A DNA stretch of 56,762 bases, counting the filler, from Dugesia japonica (taxonomy: Eukaryota): NCBI GenBank assembly GCA_001938525.1. It is 6 parts of 6 records of this genome, joined end to end, with 100 filler letters (N's around TTAATTAATTAA, not from the genome) between each part and the next. Parts side by side here need not be neighbours in the genome. Positions count along the whole stretch, not along the records: positions 1 to 10,656 come from MQRL01360226.1; 5 more parts are not named here. One strand, given 5' to 3'. The notes under the pieces are model-generated. The model had not been told where the DNA came from. It saw only the letters and a program-made list of their open reading frames with translations, and ran no database searches. Position numbers and translations under genes: made by a program. This document shows, piece after piece, positions 1 to 34,702 of this stretch (the first letter of the stretch is position 1; each line of letters opens with the position of its first letter).

Positions 1-2373
1 TTTTTCATTATTATTATTGGTTATCATTATTGATTATTATTATTGATTATTATTGCTTATTTATTATTATTGATTATTATTAGTATTATTATTGATTTTT
101 TTTTTCATATGTTGATTATTATTATGATTACCATATTTTTTAGTAATCAGATTTTATTAAGTAAAAAGTTATTTTTAAATAAAAGTATTAGCAAAAGATA
201 TTTGGTAAGTTGAAAGTTGTAAATTCTTTTAAGGTCAAGCAGGAATGTAGTTGATAAGGTTCAAATTTAAGTACATAAACAACATAATGTAAGATATGAA
301 CCATTATTCTCTATTGTTGGAATTCATTCTCAATAACGAAACCATGTAATAATGCATAAGTGATAGTCAATAGGTTGATTTTCCTTACAATGTAATTAAT
401 AATTAGGTATTTTAAAGAAAAAAAAACCAAGTAGCAAGCAAAGATTAAAACAAATAATGAAGGATTTTATGCAAAAGGATATCTATATTTCATGAGATTC
501 AAATATTATTTTCATGTTGAAACCTATATTGAACTGAAATTGTAATGGACTTAATTCTTTATCCAAAAAAATAAACCATGAGTTATTATTATCATTTTAA
601 CCTTAATACATAAATATAAAGAAAATAAAGAGAAATCCAGCAAAATAAGCGGAAATGGAGCAAAACAGACCAAATTAGTGTAAATGGGACAAAATTGGGG
701 AAACTGTGTAAATTCTAACCAGTTATTCATTAACCTTTCAAATCAATTAATTTATTCATTTAAATATTTTATTTAATTAATTAGTTTAATCTTCACTGAA
801 CTTTTTATTCAATCAAAGCAAAATTTTAAATTCAATACATTAAGAAATTATACTACACGAATGAAAATTGTAATATCTTAATAAAAAACAAAAAATTGTC
901 CTATTTTGATTAATTACAATTATCCTTATTTATTTTAGTATTTACTAAATGTGAAACCATAAATTGTAAAGGTTTTTTCCTCTTTATAATTAAATNNNNN
1001 NNNNNNNNNNNNNNNNNNNNNNNNNNNNNNNNNNNNNNNAAGCATCTATTTACGAGAAAGCTTAAATTTTCACTTCTTATTTATTTATTTTAATTAACTA
1101 ATTAATTAATTTTTTAGAAATTATAAAACCCATTTCGGAAAGTAAATTTAAAAATCTAAAGAAACTGTCACAAAATTAGAATCCAGAAAGATATTGGAGC
1201 AAAGTCTATGATTGTTTTGTATTAGATATTAAATCTATATTCAAAGTTTATAACAATAATATAGAAAAAAGAATTTGGTTATGCTAAAAACACAAGTTTG
1301 TAATCCTCAATCAAATAATTTGATATTTCATTGAAATTCAAGAGGAAATGATAAGATCTGAATAAATATTAGTCATCACATAAATACAAGAGAAATAGAG
1401 GAAAAATACGGTATAATATATGAAAATTGGGNAAAATGCACCAAAATAGTAAATGGGGTAAAAACCGGGCAAAACAGTATAAATATAGTAAAATGGTTAA
1501 AAGAGTGAGCTTAAGAGATAAATATTAAAACTTTTATCTAATAAAGTATTATATAATCAATTAAAAACTATAAAAATAAAGTGTATAATGAGACTCTTTG
1601 AACGATTATTAAACAAAAGAATTACTTTTCCACAAAACAAAAACTATAAACATCGCTATTTGCTTATTCAAACAAATTAAAATTCTATGCTTAGTTGGAA
1701 ATTTTAATCTTTTAATTTATTAAAATTTAAAATAAAATTCTCATTTTATCATTTAAACTTTTTAGTATTATCGAAAATTTTAAAATTCTTTTGGCCTGAG
1801 AAAATATCAAAAAGCTTTTACGAATGAATTTTTCTGCAGTCCTCTGTCTTTATTGTATCTTTTGGCATAGTTGAACTTACTTTCAATTGTCAAATTAATG
1901 ATGTCAAATTTTCAGCTCTTGTAATTCTTGGTTTAGGTTATTTTATTATTTTATTATTTCTTTAAAGTTTGATCGCTCCACTTCGGTACGTAATGCTTAG
2001 TCACAAAATCATCTATGAGAATGACTTCTCGTCATTTTTAAACAATTTGTGAGTATTACTATAATTAACTCTGATTTGGATTTGTAAATTTTTGACATTT
2101 TATTTTAATTTGATCCCTTTGTGTGTTTTTTTGCAACTTTTTCATAGTACCCATTTATTCACACTTGAAGTTTTAAAAAAATTGTTTTTACATTTATATG
2201 TACATTATAATAATACTAAATTCTGTTAGATATGTTAAGCATTCATTTAAGCTTAAATTTGAATTTATTACCTTTTTCAAATTTTATGTTATTGTCGGGT
2301 TTCTACGATTTTGATGTTTTAATTAGCTTTCACCTTATAATTTAATTCACATTTATTTTTTCCTTTTCATCAA

Positions 2374-2469
2374 TCTAGGGACATACCTACAAACTANNNN
2401 NNNNNNNNNNNNNNNNGTGATATGCTCCTCATTTCTCGGGTTTAGCACGACTTTGCGATATCGCGTCTT
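2374..2469 (+). ncRNA. Conserved structured motif of the coiled-coil cassette family, copy B (partly N-masked)
   Basis: TCTAGGGACATACCTA...ATGCTCCT...GTTTAG-CACGA-CTTTGCGATA-TCGCGTCTT aligns with 9961-10058 (-), 34596-34702 (-) and 39408-39508 (+). Strand is chosen by analogy with the G-U wobble pattern of the other copies. Confidence 0.5.
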
Positions 2470-2599
2470 ACTCTCTGATGTTATGAACCACATTAACGAT
2501 TTCGCTCAGAAATTATTCTCCACAAACATTAATTAAATCACAAACACGGTCATATTTTGTCAATAAATAAAATCACGATATTTGATAAAACAATAAGCT

Positions 2600-3330
2600 A
2601 GGAGTCAATATATTGCAGATGAATTAAAATAAAGTTGACGATTATTTTGGTTTTGGCCTTAAACTTTTGGTTTCCCGCTCCAGGATAGCAGCTGTAAACC
2701 ACTATTTTTCCTCGTTTCTTAATTGTGCGGAGCTCTCATAAGACTTCCCTATCAATCCATTTCAAATATGACGTTTTATAATAAAGGAATCAATTTATAA
2801 TTTTACGACACTCCAATAGTTTTCATTCTGGCATTAAGCATTTTAAGCATTAAAATTTTCAATCTTCTACTCGATCTCATTTTCTCAGCATTAACCTTCT
2901 TTGCTCTCACTTTAGCAGTATTTACGTTTTGCGCTCTTGTTTAGCTTCGTTAATTTTCTTGATCTCATTCAGGAGTCTTAACTTTTCCTACTCATTTTTA
3001 ACAATAAGAATTCTGACCAACCTTATTTTAGCAACGTTAAGTATGCTCAACTCATTGGTGCAACATTAATTTTTCTCTCATTTTCGTTTGGAGTTAACAC
3101 ATTAATTTTCTCTTGTTTTCATTTGGATTTCAGCAATAATTTTCTTTGCCTTTATCAACAATAATTTTCTCTCTGCGTTTCACATAATTACTTTCATAAC
3201 AATTTTACCAATTTTTAATCTCGATTTTCATAATTACATTTAGAAAAACTTTACCAATTTCTCTTTCTTATTCGCATAATTATTTTCATAACAATTTTGC
3301 CAATTTCTGTTTTAATCACTAATATGAACA
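2600..3330 (-). pseudogene. Decayed Lys/Glu-rich coiled-coil-like ORF beside cassette motif copy B
   Basis: Minus strand gives broken K/E/I/N-rich stretches (REKINV repeats, EKLRLLNEIKKINEAKQERK) built from degenerate ATTAATTTTCTCT repeats. It sits in the same position relative to the motif as the coiled-coil ORFs of other copies. Confidence 0.3.
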
Positions 3331-4479
3331 CGATCCTGGCTTCGGTGTCACTCGGATTATATATATAAATAAAAATCGTTAAAATTGGTATTGAAAATTA
3401 ATGGTAGTTTATTGTCTCTCAACCGGCTTTTATTATTCTCGTTATTGATGAAATCGACCAATCATTATCCTCTCATTGGCTAGTTCTTCTTGTGGCCTTT
3501 ATTGATGCATATGTACGCTACTGTTAGCACACCATTCATACACAGCATGTATCGTTTTGCTGTTCATTCACGGCTTCTCGGATGTTCTTGATTAACAGCC
3601 AATTTAGATTTTCCAAAATCGTGTCNNNNNNNNNNNNNNNNNNNNNNNNNNNNNNNNNNNNNNNNNNNNNNNNNNNNNNNNNNNNNNNNNNNNNNNNNNN
3701 NNNNNNNNNNNNNTAATTAAATGATAATAATAATATTAAACGCTATTTAGAATTATTTATAATATGAAATAGAGTCGTAGAGACTCTTTTAATATAATAT
3801 TATAATATTTTATATTACTTTTGTTATCAGTAACATCATTTCTTTCGCATATTTTAAAAAAATTTTCTTCTTTCAAATTAGGGATCCTCTACGCCTTCGT
3901 TTTCTTCCGAATTCATAAAATAATTTCATAACAATTATACTCATAATAATATAATACTAATGAAAACAATAATACTAATAGTAATTAATCTTTCTGGTCT
4001 AACACAGTTTATTTTCTCTAATTCGCTCTGAAATCTTTTCGTCGTTTGCCGGCTCTCGTGTTCTAGTCTAACATTTTTCTTTATAAAATTATAATTTTAT
4101 TTACATTTTATGGTTTGACCCTTATTAATACTACATTCTAATATTATACTTTTTAATTGATCCATGAACATCTTTATTTATAATACATAATATTTTATAT
4201 ATAACCAATATTTTACTTAATTAGCTCTTTGCCATAATATGAAATATTTAATTTATTTTTAGACAATTTCCTTATTGTTTACTCCATGTACACTAAATCA
4301 ATCAATAACTAATTACATAAAACAAATGTCAGAATAATGAAAATAATAATTATTACATACGGAATTTAATAAAATAAAAAATCAGTAATATATAAAATTA
4401 AGTTGAAAATTAAGTCTTTGTGTACATAATTTTAAGGATTTTCTATGGTTTTATTAGTGTTTTATGGTTAGAATTGTCT

Positions 4480-6100
4480 ACGTTCTTATAGAATTATACA
4501 GAATATTTTAGGGTTAATGTAAAACTTTACATTCAGTCATATAAGTTTCTAAACCAATACATAAAAACTATAATCCATCACATTAAAGTTGAATTTAATC
4601 ACACAAAATTTCTGAGTTAACTCATGAAAATTTATAAAATCAACAATTAAAGATATAATCCATCACACAAAATATTTACTCGACTCATGAAAACTAAAAC
4701 TAAACACAAAACTTTCATAGAAGACATAAAAATGTTTCAAAAACTATATAGAAGTAATCGATAACTTCCAAAATTCTCAAAACATTACATAGACGTCAAT
4801 AAAAACTTTACAAAGATATACTAAAAGTCAATTGAAGTCTTCAAAGATTACATAGAAGTCGTTAAAATTATCATTCATCACACTAAAATTTCATTCCATC
4901 ATATAAAAATACAATTCGTCAAACAAAAATTACTTTTTCATCATATGAAATTATAACTCATTGACTAAAATTAGACAGAAGTCATTAATAAGTTTAATAA
5001 ATTACAAAGAAGTCAATAAAATGTTTATGTCAACACAAAAATGCTAACCAACTATATAAATTAATAACCCATCGCATTGAACCTTTTAAATCAATACTTT
5101 AAATAATCCAGGCATTAAAATTACATTTTATTATACAAATTCTTTGACAACTCATAAAACTTATACATCAACACATCATTTCTAGTTTGTCACATAAAAT
5201 TTCTTAGTCAACACATAAAAGTAATAACCCAAAAGTTAAACTTATAATCTGTCACATTGAAATTTTTAAGTCAACGCTTCAAAATTTTAATCCCTCTCAT
5301 AAACATCTAATTCAACGCATAAAAGTTAACACTCAACAAATAAATTTTCTAAGATAACACATAAAAGTTATAATCCATCACACGAAAAATAGAGTTAATC
5401 ACAATGACATTTCTAAGTCATCGCTTTAAAACTATAATCCGTACACTAAAATTATATTCCGTTACATAAAATATATAAGCCAAAACATCAAAGTATAATA
5501 CATTTCACAAAAGTCTAATTTTAACCCATATAAATTAACGCTCAACAAGTAAAACTCAAAGTTTTACGCATAAAATTTATTAGTCAACACATAAAAATTA
5601 TAATCCATCACACTAAAATTACACTCTATCTCACCAAATTTCATTCAATCACAGTATAGTTCTAAGTAGTCACATAAAATGTTTAATCCAATACATAAAA
5701 ATTATAATTATTTGTGCTAAAGTTATACAGAAGTCATAAATTATTTAAAAATACATTTAAGTCAATAAAAAATTTCTATTAAAACGTTTTATAAATTACA
5801 CAGAAGTATTCAACAATTTTCAAAGATTACATAGAAGATAATAAAATCTCTAAGTCATCAGATAAAATTTTAAACCAACTAGTTAAACTTATAATCCATC
5901 ACACTAAAATATAGTTCATCACATTAAATTTCTAAGTCAACATGTAAAATATAATATTCATTATTGAAAATAAACACTTCAACATGTAAAATAATCACTT
6001 TGTCATAGAAAATTATAGTTTTATCACAAAACATAGACACTTCATCATAGAATATACATGTATCATCATGTTATATACNCGAGTCATCATAAACATTTAG
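4480..6100. repeat. Degenerate ~21-22 bp minisatellite array
   Basis: Recurring units ATAATCCATCACACTAAAAT, (TCTA)AGTCAACACATAAAA and TACATAGAAGTCAATAAA throughout the interval. Confidence 0.8.
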
Positions 6101-6179
6101 AGACAATTACAAAAAAAAGTATAGAACTCGTCATTGAAAATACAACTTTCACCATAAACCCTAAATTCATAAGATTTTA

Positions 6180-6440
6180 AGAGAAGAATCTGTCAATTTA
6201 AAATTTAATAAGAATCAAATTTTATCACCTTAAAATTTATTAGAATCAAAATTTAACAATTTAAAATTATTACAAATTAAAATTTATCAGTTTGAAATTA
6301 ATACAAATCAAAATTAAACAGTTTATAATTATCAAATTTAAAGTTCATAAGTTTTAAATTCTTAAGTTTAAAATTTATCGGCTTATAATGAATAGAATTT
6401 TAAATTTTTAATCTCAGATTATAGTTTTTTAAATTTATCA
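6180..6440. repeat. Degenerate ~21 bp AT-rich tandem repeat (TTAAAATTTATCA-type units)
   Basis: Repeated AAAATTTA...AGAATCAAAATTT units. Confidence 0.55.
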
Positions 6441-7400
6441 ACTTATTAATTACTTTTATTTTATAATTAATTCTTGTTTAATCATATTAATTAAAATATA
6501 GTTGATAATTATTATTTAACATTTGTTTTATATTTCAATTTTAAATATGACGAACACTTATTATTTAAAATTAAAAGTTAAAAGTAAGATTTATTTTATT
6601 TGTTGTTGTTAATTAACATTTGTATTTAGACATTTTGAACCATTATAATATGCAGAAGAGTTTTAATATGTTAAATAAACAGAGGAATTTATTAAAATTA
6701 TATTAATTTTATTATGTCAAATGAAAATTATAATTTAAAATCAAGTATCAATTTATTTCACAAATTAATTTATAAGTCACTCATTTGTAAAGTTTAGATT
6801 TTTGATTTAAATTAATGTTTTAATTAAATAATAATACAAATAATATATTGATTTCATTAATTATATTAAGACAGAATAATTTTACTTAAACATATAAATA
6901 TTAACAATGATTGTCATCAGATGAGCAGTTAATATTAATGAGCCAAGAATCATCGAATGTCGATAGAATGAGCCATTGAACATCTAATATTATAAAATTT
7001 GAAACAACTTTTTGTATGATCCATTGAACATCTATTAGTATGAAACCTGAGCAACTAATGTTAATATTGCCAGGGGAATATTTAATACTGATATTGCATT
7101 GGGAATATTTAATTTTAATATTGATCAGGGAATATTTAATATTAATGTTAATATTTCCCGGCTCTGCTAATGTTAAGGTTACTCTGAAAAAATAAACTTT
7201 TATAAAAAAGAAGAAAAAATCATTAATTTGACTTAATTTAAACAAAATTAAACAATTTCATTTCAATTAAACAAAATACCACTAAAATTATTTAATTAAA
7301 ACAACAAATAAATAATTCCATTTAATTTAAACAAATAATAAATAATTTGACCTCATTTAAACAAGAAATCAAGAAAATACATTGACTAAAACAAACGTAC

Positions 7401-7490
7401 GGATTACACAATCGTTGCGCAATCATGATGTGATCATTATGTAACTATGATATAATCGTTACATAACCATGGAAGTGTTGCGTAATCAAA
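7401..7490. promoter_or_regulatory. 11-bp-phased array of C/EBP/PAR-bZIP-like sites followed by a CCAAT box
   Basis: TTACACAA 7404, TTGCGCAA 7415, TGATGTGA 7426, TTATGTAA 7437, TGATATAA 7448, TTACATAA 7459, TTGCGTAA 7478; GACCAATCA near 7504. Confidence 0.45.
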
Positions 7491-8741
7491 TCACAAAAAT
7501 TTCGACCAATCAAAACGTTTAAAACCGGGCACAGTTGACCTTTAAAAAACTTGGGGACTTACTGTGCCCATGCTGAACTATCTATTTACTTAGTTTAATT
7601 GAAATATAATCCGCAGTATTACTTACTGCCACAAAAATTTATTTATGTCGGTGGTGACTAAGGTTTTTAACTCACCAAAATAATTTCCACAGAACAAGAA
7701 ATATTTTTGGATCTACAATATTAATATAAATTTATGGGAACAGTTACTACTCTACTTTTTATCTAGGAGCGAGAATTAATATCAAAATAATCAGACTGAA
7801 CCACAGATTTATCAAATTATATAAAAGAAAATGCACTAGATTATTAATTACTTTAAAAAGGAGTACTTGCAGTCTCTAATCTGGCCTAAAACTACCTATA
7901 CATCACCCAAAGTATTTGCATCGAAAAATGCTTCAACTCACCACAAAATTTATGTCAGTATGACCCCATCCTACACCCCTGATGACGACTGATTTGGATG
8001 AAAATTTATTGTTAGATGTAAAATTAAACAGTAAAATAGGAATGTCTCATAAACCTATTTCCTAAAATTTATCCTTCCCTGTTAAAATGTAATGTTATAA
8101 TTGTCGAAAATTCAGTGTCCGCAAGACGGTAGAGTTATATGGGAGCTCGGTGAATAAAATAAATTCTATATATGATTTCTGCTACTTTATATGGTCTGAT
8201 TTTTATAAATTATTTTTTTTTTTCGTGGTTACAAGTTATAAATATAAATTCTTTTTTAAGTAATTATCTTTATTTAATTTCATCTAGATAAAACTTCATA
8301 TTCTTATAAGGTGTAAAGTATCAAATATTGTTGATCATATCTATTTTTCATTAATTTTTCTTGAATGATCAACCAGCGTTATAATTGAGATTTTCTGAAT
8401 TGGCACCTAATCATTAATGATTAAAGACGAAATTTTTTCGTGGTTTTATAATTCAATAATCGGATCTTTAGTTGTTCTAATAAAACGAATAATTTAAGTA
8501 TAGTCGATTAATAGTAGGGACATCTTCTGAGAATTCCGGAAGATGGTGAACGAGCAAAGATGGTGGTATCCAGCTGACATCTTTTCTAGTTCACCCTCTA
8601 GGAATAAGGACGAAAAACAGATAGGCTGCAGGCCGAAGAAAAATCTGTGGTTTATGCTTAGTTTATTTTAATTTGTTAATTGAAAATACATGTATTATTA
8701 GTGGTGGAAAATCAAAAAATTGTTAATTTTTTTAACAGAAA

Positions 8742-9173
8742 ATGACCACGTTTTTCAAGGCACATATTCACTTGGTGCTCTCCAATGGCGGCGATGAAAG
8801 TACGTTTTGGATCCCCTGGCGAAATGCAGTTGAGCTGCTGAACGATCAAAAAGCCGCTTACGAGAAGGAGAAAAGGGAGATGCAAGTGGGTCAGCAGGAG
8901 TTAATAAAACGCCACATCGAGTTACGGTGGCAATGGAAAATAATTAATGCGGAGAAGGAGAAGTTTGAGATGAAATTGACACAGCGAGAGTCGAAAATAC
9001 AGGAAATTGCCAACGAATTCTCAACGGCAACTCAGCATCTAATGGAGCATCGATTCGTTATGGAGAAGATCGAAGTGAAGATCCTGGAGCAGCTGATGGA
9101 CAACTCGGGAGCTGTGACCGATGTCCAAGATCCTGTGATTGTAAAAACAGAGTCATTAAGCAACGTCCAATAA
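8742..9173 (+). CDS. Cassette ORF-A, coiled-coil protein (copy A)
   Basis: 143 aa, GC-enriched against the flanks, heptad E/K/Q-rich. Preceded by the TTTTAACAG acceptor, with AATAAA overlapping the stop. C-terminus EKIEVKILEQLM..VIVKTE resembles NKIEVVLQQIL..YIITE at 33686-33883. Confidence 0.7.
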   Translation: MTTFFKAHIHLVLSNGGDESTFWIPWRNAVELLNDQKAAYEKEKREMQVGQQELIKRHIELRWQWKIINAEKEKFEMKLTQRESKIQEIANEFSTATQHLMEHRFVMEKIEVKILEQLMDNSGAVTDVQDPVIVKTESLSNVQ

Positions 9174-9477
9174 ATGTTTCAATATGTACCAGAGTTTTTG
9201 TTATTGATTTAATTATTTAATGTGATATGTATGTCATATTGAGAGTAAAGCATATTTCTGTTGACCACAGAAGCAGTCATAAATTTAATGCGTTTGATTG
9301 ATCATTGTTTTTATTCGGTGTAATAGCACAAAATTGGGACCAATGTTTAATTCAATGCCTATTAAATAATTCTAGGTCTCGGACAATCAAATCAACTCAT
9401 AATATTTATTGTCTTTAATTATTTATATTCATGTAGTCGGTTGAAGATATTGCAATTGATTTTCGTCTTATTATTTA

Positions 9478-9798
9478 GTGAACAAATTCCTTGATAAGAA
9501 ATTATTAAAACGAGATGTAGTTGCAGCGCAGCAAAGGTGGAAGGAGGAGAGGCGCGATTTGCGTAACGAAATCCTACAGTTCAAGGGCCACTTAAATCGA
9601 TCATCATCGAAATATGCTCAATTAAAAGAAAAAGAGTTGGCATTACAACATGCCAACCGCCTTATGGCCGACATCATCAAGATTTTTGCAGATCGCGAGG
9701 CGACGATGTTCCTCACTTTGCGGATGTTGTGGTTAAATTACCGGTCCCCTAAGGAATCGACCGAAGCCATGGAGCAGACCGTGGATCTTGACGCCTAA
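9478..9798 (+). CDS. Cassette ORF-B, coiled-coil protein (copy A; probable terminal exon)
   Basis: KELALQHANRLMADIIKIFADRE motif shared with 34151, 39642 and 54281. The called GTG start is a TTTAG|TG acceptor; AATAAA near 9825. Confidence 0.75.
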   Translation: MNKFLDKKLLKRDVVAAQQRWKEERRDLRNEILQFKGHLNRSSSKYAQLKEKELALQHANRLMADIIKIFADREATMFLTLRMLWLNYRSPKESTEAMEQTVDLDA

Positions 9799-9960
9799 TC
9801 ACAAATGAGGCCATGTTTATAGCCAAATAAATGTTAATGTTTGTGTCTAGAGTATCTTGATTTTCGTTAAAAGTTTAGTTGTGGAAGTAAAATTATTGTA
9901 ATAACCTTTTACTGAGCATAAAAAGAATAATTGCTGTCCGGGCTCACAGATTTAATGAGC

Positions 9961-10058
9961 AAGACGCGATACCGCAAAGTCGCGCTGAACACGTGGAAAA
10001 AGGGGCATGTCACTGAGGTTACATAAATACTTGTGGTTTTTAGGTATGCCCCTAGACA
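9961..10058 (-). ncRNA. Conserved structured motif of the cassette, copy A
   Basis: Minus strand has outer stem AGGGGCAT/ATGCCCCT and hairpin GCGCGA-CTTTGCGGTA-TCGCGT, homologous to three other copies with covariation. Confidence 0.55.
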
Positions 10059-10700
10059 TGTAAAAGAATATGTGATTAATAAAAGCGAGATCAGTGAATT
10101 CGAAAAGAAATTTTAAATCATCAAATCCTAAAAACCCAACATTTGTATTTTTCCATTTCCAATGCTTTTTTACATCCCAATATTTAAAGAATATTATTGT
10201 ATGTTTTCCACTTTTGTCAACAAATTGAGATGTTTTACCGATAGGAAACTTCATTTTGGCTGTTACATCTTGCGACACTTTACCTTTGTAATTAGTATTA
10301 ACTAACATTTTTTAATGATTTTTAATAAATGAGAGTGTATATATATACATATTTTTCAGAAATAAAATTAATTGATTCATTTAAACAAAAAAAAAGTATT
10401 ATAAACAATGCATTAAATTAAATCTATATAAGATGGAGTTGAGAAATGATGATGAGTTTATCAAATTGTTGGTCCAAGCGGTAGCGGAAAAAAACATTGT
10501 TTGTATGTAAGTTACTAAGATCACATTTATTTAAATAAAAATTAAACAAAATATATTGGCACATAGGTGCAGATAAAGAGCATGGGGTGACACAATCTAA
10601 ACTTTGCAACATGAATATGAGATTTATAAATGGATTTGATAAAAATTGAAGCAAGANNNNNNNNNNNNNNNNNNNNNNNNNNNNNNNNNNNNNNNNNNNN

Positions 10701-34595: not shown

Positions 34596-34702
34596 AGGAC
34601 AGGATACAGCATAGTCCCGCTGAATCCTGGAATAGGGGATCGTGGTGATGCGAGATATAGCATCACAAATTTCTGTGTTTACTAGGTATCATCCCTCAGA
34701 CA
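34596..34702 (-). ncRNA. Conserved structured motif, copy C
   Basis: Minus strand reads GAGGGATGATACCTAGTAAACACAGAAATTTGTGATGC..GCATCAC..ATCCCCT..GATTCA-GCGGGA-CTATGCTGTA-TCCTGT. Confidence 0.55.

What the first reader, a model, noticed from the sequence alone, without database searches (positions are those of the whole stretch)
9961..10058. Conserved ~100-nt structured motif with base-pair covariation at the cassette 3' end
Seen: four clear copies (2374-2469, 9961-10058, 34596-34702, 39408-39508); in copies A, C and D it lies 125-165 nt past the ORF-B stop. Read antisense to the ORFs, a hairpin with a 10-nt loop CTWTGCKRTA has stems GCGCGA/TCGCGT, GCGGGA/TCCTGT, GTGAGA/TCTCGT and GCACGA/TCGCGT, so one pair switches C-G, G-C, A-T. 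An outer stem changes from AGGGGCAT/ATGCCCCT to GGGGAT/ATCCCC and encloses an invariant ATACCTA and a variable hairpin (GTGATGC/GCATCAC, TGATGT/ACATCA). Nucleotide conservation exceeds that of the ORFs, and mismatches resolve as G-U pairs mainly on the antisense strand. I cannot match it to hammerhead, HDV, tRNA, snRNA or SL RNA consensus. Inference: a new ncRNA/ribozyme, a packaging or priming signal, or an ssDNA replication origin.
Basis: partly seen in the sequence, partly recalled or inferred. Interest (0 to 1): 0.88.

Follow-up and report, generated by a model that had tools for sequence, protein, structure and literature searches.

The report
Dispersed 185-nt repeat with hairpin core
The "structured motif" is real as a conserved, GC-rich, hairpin-forming core of a ~185-base repeat present twice (in opposite orientations) in this AT-rich eukaryote-like DNA. 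The claimed base-pair covariation and antisense-strand preference are not seen here, and it looks more like the tail end of a repeated transcript or mobile unit than a proven new RNA gene.

Summary
Two copies exist in this piece: B (9957-10141, +) and A (2293-2473, inverted). The ~100-nt core is 82% identical (65 of 79 comparable bases; 20 nt of A are masked). An ~85-nt tail is about 57% identical, and similarity then stops sharply at both ends.

Between A and B, however, no pair changes on both sides, on either strand. The strand of ORF-A/ORF-B (sense) folds better than the antisense strand (-35.3 kcal/mol, z -3.2, against -25.3, z -1.5).

Rfam, tRNA, Pfam and the public DNA scans gave no true match, so a larger alignment could not be built.

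On the sense strand both copies carry AATAAA 17-22 nt after the core, and end 58-59 nt further on at ...ACA. Copy A has no ORF-B beside it, is shifted towards A/T, and is bracketed by a 7-bp direct repeat (P about 0.016).

Best reading (confidence 0.35): the 3'-end module of a repeated transcription unit, acting as sense-strand RNA structure, with copy A a solo truncated insertion.

Rivals:
- inverted ends of an ~8-kb inserted DNA element
- an antisense small-RNA gene
- a coding remnant
- a recombination site

Interest is modest.

The parts
9957..10055 (+). Copy B, conserved core (the finding's motif). It holds hairpin 1 and the outer stem-loop, is 48% G+C, and sits in ~25-30% G+C surroundings.
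9964..9985 (+). Hairpin 1 of copy B: 5-6 bp G+C-rich stem with a 10-nt loop. The loop differs at one base between the copies.
10001..10053 (+). Outer 8-bp stem (AGGGGCAT/ATGCCCCT) of copy B, closing 37 nt.
10056..10141 (+). Less conserved tail of unit B. AATAAA lies at 10078-10083, the stretch is A/C-rich, and homology with A ends at ...CCCAACA (10141).
2375..2473 (-). Copy A, conserved core, in inverted orientation. Positions 2397-2416 are masked N and were left unread.
2293..2374 (-). Tail of unit A. AATAAA is read on the - strand at 2357..2352, and homology ends at 2293.
2286..2292 (.). Left copy of the 7-bp direct repeat ATGTTAT bracketing unit A (candidate target-site duplication).
   Evidence: P = 0.016 for 14-nt flanks
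2478..2484 (.). Right copy of the 7-bp direct repeat ATGTTAT.
8531..9798 (+). Coiled-coil gene upstream of copy B. Open stretches are 8531-8668, 8736-9170 (ORF-A) and 9460-9798 (ORF-B, stop at 9796-9798). No family passes its cut-off.
10142..10308 (-). Fragment of a small TBP-domain-like gene. It abuts the outer end of unit B, and its similarity to relatives ends where the A/B homology begins. It is broken (one change of frame, then loss of similarity).

Best explanation
The motif is the conserved core of a ~185-nt repeat unit. Most likely this unit is the 3'-end module of a repeated transcription unit, read on the same strand as ORF-A/ORF-B.

On that sense strand the layout is:
- a G+C-rich hairpin with a nearly invariant 10-nt loop
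- a 15-nt variable spacer
- an 8-bp stem closing 37 nt
- AATAAA 17-22 nt later
- an A/C-rich tail of 58-59 nt that ends at ...ACA.

Copy B sits in place, 162 nt after the ORF-B stop. Copy A is a solo copy that starts exactly at the 5' edge of the core and lacks the ORFs. It has drifted towards A/T and is bracketed by a 7-bp direct repeat. That is the footprint of a 5'-truncated copy inserted elsewhere, most simply through an RNA intermediate.

On this reading the two stems act as RNA structure in the sense transcript. They would be a handle for a protein that controls 3'-end formation, stability or localisation, or that picks the RNA as a template for copying.

Shown: the repeat, its sharp bounds, the stems, the better fold of the sense strand, the shared AATAAA and end point, the uneven conservation, and the direct repeat around A.

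Inferred: that it is transcribed, on which strand, the protein handle, and retroposition.
For: - The repeat and its bounds.
- Sense strand: MFE -35.3, z -3.2 (1 of 200 shuffles as good), against antisense -25.3, z -1.5.
- Hairpin alone: sense z -1.7 (B) and -2.0 (A), against antisense -0.7 and 0.0.
- Of the three stem changes, two stay paired as G-U on the sense strand and one on the antisense strand.
- AATAAA is aligned in both copies (10078-10083; 2357..2352), with equal distances of 58-59 nt to the end of homology.
- The core is 82% identical and the tail 57%; beyond both ends identity is at background.
- 9 of the 12 differences that change G+C content have G/C in B and A/T in A, as expected if A decays freely.
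- There is no ORF-B relative beside A.
- A 7-bp direct repeat flanks A, P = 0.016.
- The unit has no terminal inverted repeat of its own (read directly).
Against: - There are only two copies, one partly masked, and no expression data.
- No poly(A) or simple-repeat tail follows unit A.
- Another AATAAA lies at 9826-9831, just after the ORF-B stop, so the mRNA may end before the motif.
- 58 nt from AATAAA to the proposed end is long for a cleavage site.
- The 7-bp repeat was noticed after looking, and nhmmer's alignment envelope reaches over its right copy.
- The ORF-A/ORF-B gene appears to have introns, so copy B is not itself a retrocopy.
- No reverse transcriptase lies in the piece.
- The TBP-like gene pieces on the two outer sides fit an ~8-kb insertion with inverted ends better.
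Confidence: 0.35

Rival explanations
1. The two units are the (sub)terminal inverted repeats of one ~8-kb inserted DNA element (about 2100-10141). This element carries the coiled-coil gene as cargo. The conserved core would then be a DNA-level binding region for a recombinase or transposase, and the stems would be palindromic half-sites.
For: - The pair is inverted and 7.5 kb apart.
- A TBP-like gene fragment (profile positions 1-43 strong, 48-61 weak) ends at 10142, exactly where unit B begins.
- A weak further piece (positions about 62-92) lies on the same strand just outside unit A at 2016-2099. By a rough post-hoc estimate the joint placement has odds of about 0.004.
Against: - The left gene piece alone is at noise level (3.8 bits, rank 5 of 818 peptides; a combined piece scores 2.1 bits, which about 8-10% of shuffled windows reach).
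- No target duplication lies outside the pair (best 5-mer, P 0.21).
- 193 nt separate unit A from the gene piece, against 0 nt for unit B.
- The arms are only 64% identical, and the outermost 85 nt are the least conserved part.
- No transposase, integrase or other domain appears in any open frame of 45 aa or more.
- Copy A has its own flanking 7-bp repeat.
Confidence: 0.2
2. This is the reader's reading: an independent gene for a ~100-nt structured small RNA on the antisense strand. The conserved block 55-85 nt upstream and the T/A-rich box about 25 nt upstream would serve as an external snRNA-type promoter.
For: - A conserved upstream block (10110-10141 / 2293-2325) and an aligned TTTATT about 20-30 nt before CTAGGGG are present.
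- The layout is 5' stem-loop, spacer, then 3' hairpin.
- No known family matches, so it would be new.
Against:
- There are no compensatory changes.
- The single-stranded spacer, where an Sm-type site would lie, is the least conserved part of the core: 6 of the 14 core differences fall in columns 56-69.
- The hexamer is an exact AATAAA on the other strand and a poor TATA box on this one.
- The ATTC-CAA core that is invariant in fly PSEAs (PMC1761439) is not found at the required spacing. The organism is unknown, so this test is weak.
Confidence: 0.12
3. The motif is (or was) protein-coding. It would be either the C-terminal part of the 118-codon antisense ORF 9952-10308 (...DFAVSRL...) that begins as a TBP-like protein, or a small sense-strand exon (...SKTRYRKV...).
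For: - The 118-codon ORF is long for DNA this A+T-rich, and its first 43 residues are truly TBP-like (hhalign 98.6%).
- Two frames, one on each strand and sharing their third positions, are open across the core in both copies.
Against: - Residues 44-118 match nothing among 1.84 billion representatives nor the family profile.
- The ...DFAVSRL frame has 3 stops in copy A.
- The differences show no codon periodicity (6/4/4).
- The predicted structure is unusable (pLDDT 34).
- There is no Pfam hit.
Confidence: 0.05
4. It is a site for site-specific DNA breakage and joining, or a single-strand replication or packaging origin of a virus-like element. The closest analogue is the host integration motif of polydnavirus circles: two reverse-complementary boundary repeats around a 33-78-bp spacer that is lost on integration.
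For: The form is similar. 8-bp arms lie 37 bp apart inside a ~100-bp conserved motif in A+T-rich, gene-poor DNA (descriptions in PMC8549517 and PMC7843510).
Against: - The boundary repeats quoted for braco- and ichnovirus motifs (PMC7843510) are absent as pairs. There is one 1-mismatch hit in B's tail, none in A, and window-wide counts are at chance.
- No viral, replication, capsid or integrase gene lies in the piece.
- Both copies are whole, not split halves at element ends.
- ssDNA folds are unremarkable.
Confidence: 0.05

Closest known systems
Conserved 3'-UTR stem-loops of 'stringent-type' non-LTR retrotransposons and their SINE partners, and the 5'-truncated copies they leave (from established knowledge of LINE/SINE biology, not tested against sequences)
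   Same: - A structured, conserved element lies near a fixed 3' end.
- One copy is truncated on the 5' side.
- A short direct repeat of variable type flanks that insertion.
- The unit has no terminal inverted repeat of its own.
   Different: - No reverse transcriptase or endonuclease gene is nearby.
- There is no poly(A) or microsatellite tail.
- The upstream ORFs are coiled-coil proteins in what looks like an intron-bearing gene.
- The conserved core lies 85 nt from the end, not at it.
Regulatory stem-loops in mRNA 3' UTRs of paralogous gene families
   Same: - It lies 162 nt after a stop codon on the same strand.
- A conserved AATAAA follows it.
- The hairpin loop is more conserved than the surrounding UTR.
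   Different: - Copy A has no gene in front of it.
- An earlier AATAAA lies upstream of the motif.
- There are no expression data.
Host integration motif (HIM) of polydnavirus circles (PMC8549517, PMC7843510)
   Same: It is a ~100-120-bp conserved motif made of two reverse-complementary arms around a few tens of bp, lying inside A+T-rich, gene-poor DNA.
   Different: - The arm sequences are unrelated.
- There is no second pair of boundary repeats.
- No proviral segment features or virus genes were seen.
- Nothing shows breakage at the arms.
Sm-class snRNA / spliced-leader RNA genes
   Same: - The size is ~100 nt.
- On the antisense strand the layout is 5' stem-loop, spacer, then 3'-terminal hairpin.
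- A conserved block lies 55-85 nt upstream.
   Different: - There is no Rfam match.
- The spacer, where the Sm site should be, is the most variable part.
- The antisense fold is not better than chance.
- No promoter consensus could be matched.
Terminal inverted repeats of non-autonomous DNA transposons
   Same: Two inverted copies lie 7.5 kb apart. One of them exactly abuts a broken gene.
   Different: - There is no target duplication outside the pair.
- There is no transposase.
- The outermost part is the least conserved.
- The two ends are asymmetric by 193 nt.

Membership tests
Any Rfam 15 family (incl. hammerhead, HDV-like, snRNAs, SL RNAs, snoRNAs, tRNA-like) | Match to the covariance model at or near the gathering score | tested here: not met
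   The whole piece at E<=1 gave 0 hits. Positions 9900-10200 at E<=10 gave only mir-1 (15 bits against 45.6) and VrrA (14 bits against 50), both outside or across the motif by chance.
tRNA / tRNA-derived SINE head | Cloverleaf recognisable by ARAGORN | tested here: not met
   0 genes in 1-10656.
Structured RNA supported by covariation (generic) | Base pairs kept through changes on both sides | tested here: not met
   0 of 14 pairs on either strand. The 3 stem differences are one-sided. With two sequences the test has almost no power.
Sm-class snRNA / SL RNA gene | Conserved single-stranded Sm site between the 5' domain and the 3' hairpin | tested here: not met
   Spacer columns 56-69 carry 6 of the 14 core differences, and no purine-flanked U-run is shared.
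Sm-class snRNA / SL RNA gene | Lineage-specific PSE at fixed distance from the start | tested here: inconclusive
   A conserved upstream block exists. The fly-type invariant core (PMC1761439) is not at the right spacing, and the organism is unknown.
Non-LTR retroposon 3' end / 5'-truncated copy | Copies share a precise 3' end and differ at the 5' end | tested here: met
   Both end at ...CCCRACA, after which similarity is at background. A begins at the core, while B continues upstream into unrelated UTR and ORFs.
Non-LTR retroposon 3' end / 5'-truncated copy | Target-site duplication around the insertion | tested here: inconclusive
   The 7-bp ATGTTAT flanks A, P = 0.016. None was found for B. 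The repeat was noticed post hoc.
Non-LTR retroposon 3' end / 5'-truncated copy | A-rich or simple-repeat tail; reverse transcriptase in the family | tested here: not met
   No tail lies after 2293 or 10141. No RT domain was found in any open frame of the piece. Partner elements elsewhere could not be searched.
mRNA 3'-UTR element | Downstream of a stop codon on the coding strand and upstream of a poly(A) signal | tested here: met
   Copy B: stop at 9796-9798, core at 9957-10055, AATAAA at 10078-10083. AATAAA is conserved in A. Transcription itself is not testable here.
TIR DNA transposon | Inverted termini plus target-site duplication plus (in autonomous members) a transposase | tested here: not met
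   The inverted pair is present. There is no duplication outside it and no transposase.
MITE | The unit has its own terminal inverted repeats | tested here: not met
   The ends of the 185-nt unit are not complementary (read).
Polydnavirus host integration motif | Two pairs of family-specific reverse-complementary boundary repeats (as quoted in PMC7843510) | tested here: not met
   no pair in or near either unit.
Polydnavirus host integration motif | Arms separated by 33-78 bp inside a ~110-120-bp motif | tested here: met
   The 8-bp arms are 37 bp apart. This is a resemblance of form only.
Protein-coding exon | Open frame in all copies, third-position excess, relatives in protein databases | tested here: not met
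Nothing matches residues 44-118.

The most novel reading that the evidence does not exclude
The core is a new, lineage-restricted structured RNA element. It would be either a cis-acting handle on the sense transcript that directs copying or 3'-end processing of a whole family of cassettes, or a small non-coding RNA gene with its own upstream promoter. It has no relative in Rfam.
Probability: 0.15. Interest if true: 0.6.

Novelty: new member of a known kind. Interest (0 to 1): 0.3.

Why it matters
If the core proves to be a functional RNA structure, it would add an uncatalogued cis-element or small RNA from a very A+T-rich eukaryotic genome. It could also explain how a family of coiled-coil gene cassettes is regulated or copied.

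As it stands, it is chiefly useful as a repeat-family marker. It is also a caution: a few apparent 'compensatory' changes read by eye in four copies are not evidence of covariation.

Tried and rejected
- Public DNA scans for more copies gave only chance matches. IMG/VR gave 2 unrelated phage-like contigs. JGI metagenomes gave 1 hit, inside a bacterial tyrosine-recombinase gene and with a different spacing. GTDB genomes gave 0 and then 2 bacterial coding hits.
- Full-text search for the hairpin sequence found 0 papers.
- Protein searches with ORF-A and ORF-B, exon by exon, found nothing in the allowed length band.
- Pfam on all 44 open frames of 45 aa or more gave only two sub-threshold coiled-coil-type hits. 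PDB sequence search gave nothing.
- AlphaFold of the 118-aa ORF gave pLDDT 34 and is unusable, so no fold search was run.
- A long target duplication or other direct similarity between the two outer flanks was not found.
- A target duplication for unit B: the best is an 8-mer, P = 0.18, so it was rejected.
- The idea that the core is the diverged YEPE..FPG part of the TBP-like domain was rejected. The profile aligns only residues 1-43, plus a weak 48-61 in another frame.
- A telomerase-RNA template, box C/D snoRNA, Helitron 3' end and tyrosine-recombinase remnant were each considered from the sequence. All were dropped for lack of the defining features.
None was entered into a tool, a note or this report, and no conclusion rests on them.
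- The short polydnavirus repeats used were taken from PMC7843510 and searched in the window only.

Full report
**What the piece is.** Positions 1-10656 are very A+T-rich (17-42% G+C in 500-nt windows). Only four ORFs reach 80 codons, there are several short-period repeat arrays, and there are no tRNA or Rfam genes. This reads as eukaryotic DNA, not as a virus or a bacterium. N runs lie at 996-1039, 2397-2416 and 3626-3713. They were left as they are. The second one hides 20 nt inside copy A.

**Checking the observation.** The two copies that lie in this piece are real.
- The 21-nt hairpin block and the 15-nt CTAGGGRCATACCTA block each occur exactly twice, against 0.00 and 0.10 expected.
- They form an inverted pair.
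- Self-blastn and nhmmer find only this pair. The homology is longer than the finding says: 2293-2473 against 10141-9957.
- The 99-nt core is 65/79 identical (82%). The ~85 nt beyond the CTAGGGG side are 50/88 identical, plus 10 gap columns. Past the hairpin side identity is at background.
- Local alignments of a further 250-350 nt on either side score no better than shuffles.

The unit is therefore ~185 nt with sharp ends. Its core is significantly better kept than its tail.

**Structure and covariation.** Both stems exist. The three stem differences between A and B are all one-sided, and no pair changes on both sides on either strand. Stems (3/28) are not significantly less variable than the rest (11/51; Fisher P 0.36).

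Fold energies favour the strand of ORF-A/B:
- Whole motif: -35.3 kcal/mol, z -3.2, against -25.3, z -1.5 for the antisense strand.
- Hairpin alone: z -1.7 and -2.0 (sense, B and A) against -0.7 and 0.0.
- With DNA parameters both strands are ordinary (z about -1.5).

So the claims of covariation and of an antisense preference are not borne out by the copies I can see. With two sequences, the absence of covariation proves little.

**Is it coding?** An antisense ORF of 118 codons (9952-10308) runs through copy B.
- Its first 43 residues belong to a family of ~150-aa TBP-domain proteins, known only from unnamed ENA/Logan assemblies. hhalign gives probability 98.6% over residues 1-43 only.
- The rest, which the motif would encode, matches nothing.
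- In copy A the same frame has three stops.
- The 14 core differences fall 6/4/4 over the three phases.
- AlphaFold gave pLDDT 34.

Two other frames, one per strand and sharing third positions, are open in both copies, but neither has any database support. Coding is unlikely.

**What surrounds the copies.** Copy B starts 162 nt after the stop of ORF-B. ORF-B together with ORF-A and an upstream open stretch looks like an intron-bearing coiled-coil gene on the + strand. It has no recognised domain. Copy A has no relative of these ORFs beside it.

Read on the ORF strand, both copies carry an aligned AATAAA 17-22 nt after the core (10078-10083; 2357..2352). Both also end 58-59 nt later at ...ACA.

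Nine of the twelve differences that alter G+C have G/C in B and A/T in A, as if A were decaying freely.

Unit A is bracketed by the direct repeat ATGTTAT (2286-2292, 2478-2484). A match that long occurs in 1.6% of random placements with 14-nt flanks. Nothing comparable flanks B, or the 7.85-kb span as a whole.

**A complication.** The TBP-like similarity on the - strand is strong for profile positions 1-43 and weak for 48-61 in another frame. It ends at 10142, exactly where unit B begins. A weak piece matching positions about 62-92 lies on the same strand at 2016-2099, just outside unit A.
- Each weak piece alone is at noise level: 2.6 and 3.8 bits, ranks 10 and 5 of 818 peptides. A combined piece scores 2.1 bits, which about 8-10% of shuffled windows reach.
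- Their placement is nevertheless suggestive of one small gene split by ~8 kb whose right end is unit B.

This keeps alive the reading that the two units are inverted ends of an inserted DNA element. Against that reading:
- there is no outer target duplication
- there is a 193-nt asymmetry between the ends
- the outermost parts are poorly conserved
- no transposase-like frame is present.

Nested insertions in a repeat-rich region would reconcile both observations.

**Search for relatives.**
- Pattern scans of IMG/VR, JGI metagenomes and GTDB genomes returned only chance matches in bacterial or phage coding sequence.
- The literature holds no such string.

The larger alignment that would decide the matter could therefore not be made here.

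**Comparison with known things.**
- No Rfam family fits.
- The form resembles a polydnavirus host integration motif, with two complementary arms around a few tens of bp (PMC8549517, PMC7843510). The published boundary repeats are absent as pairs, however, and no virus-like gene is present.
- On the antisense strand the layout recalls an Sm-class snRNA or spliced-leader gene with an upstream element. But the spacer that should hold the Sm site is the most variable part, and the fly-type PSEA core (PMC1761439) is not in place.

**Verdict.** The repeat is real and its core is probably under some constraint.
- Best reading (0.35): the 3'-end module of a repeated transcription unit, working as sense-strand RNA structure, with copy A a solo truncated insertion.
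- Rivals: inverted ends of an ~8-kb DNA insertion (0.2), an antisense small-RNA gene (0.12), a coding remnant (0.05), and a recombination or origin site (0.05). The remainder is open.
- It is a new member of a known kind (an unclassified interspersed repeat with a structured core), and interest is modest.

Noticed in passing
window 10142-10308 (-): This is the N-terminal fragment of a small TBP-domain-like protein. Residues 1-43 are 52-53% identical to a family of ~150-aa proteins seen only in unnamed ENA/Logan assemblies. The gene is broken here: one change of frame, then loss of similarity. The 118-codon ORF is a read-through.
   Followed up: yes
window 2016-2138 (-): A weak second TBP-like piece (profile positions about 50/62-92, one stop) lies just outside copy A, on the same strand as the first fragment. 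If real, the small gene is split by ~8 kb. The score is at noise level and the placement is suggestive.
   Followed up: partly
window 8531-9798 (+), with a possible promoter near 7480-7540: An orphan coiled-coil gene has three open stretches and plausible splice sites. Only sub-threshold similarity was found (HAUS augmin subunit 3, E 1e-3, 19 bits against a cut-off of 29), and there are no relatives within the length band searched.
   Followed up: partly
window 4512-5977; 6198-6327; 7056-7149; 7211-7364; 3166-3306: There are several arrays of short repeats: periods of about 21 and 62 nt (18 copies of a 56-nt register), 15-31 nt, 27 nt, 30 nt and 46 nt. The first array has a strong C-over-G skew. 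Their nature is unknown.
   Followed up: no
window 9990-9995: A CACGTG palindrome (E-box-like) lies in the spacer of copy B. It is not conserved in copy A.
   Followed up: no
window 2453-2462: In copy A the loop change makes GCGATATCGC a perfect 10-bp palindrome. This gives an alternative small hairpin, which is the one the sense-strand fold of A uses.
   Followed up: partly
L003 295-391 (-): The only metagenome match to the two-block pattern lies in the conserved RHTY...LGH...TLRY region of a bacterial tyrosine-recombinase gene, with 75-nt rather than 59-nt spacing. It is a coincidence, not a relative.
   Followed up: yes
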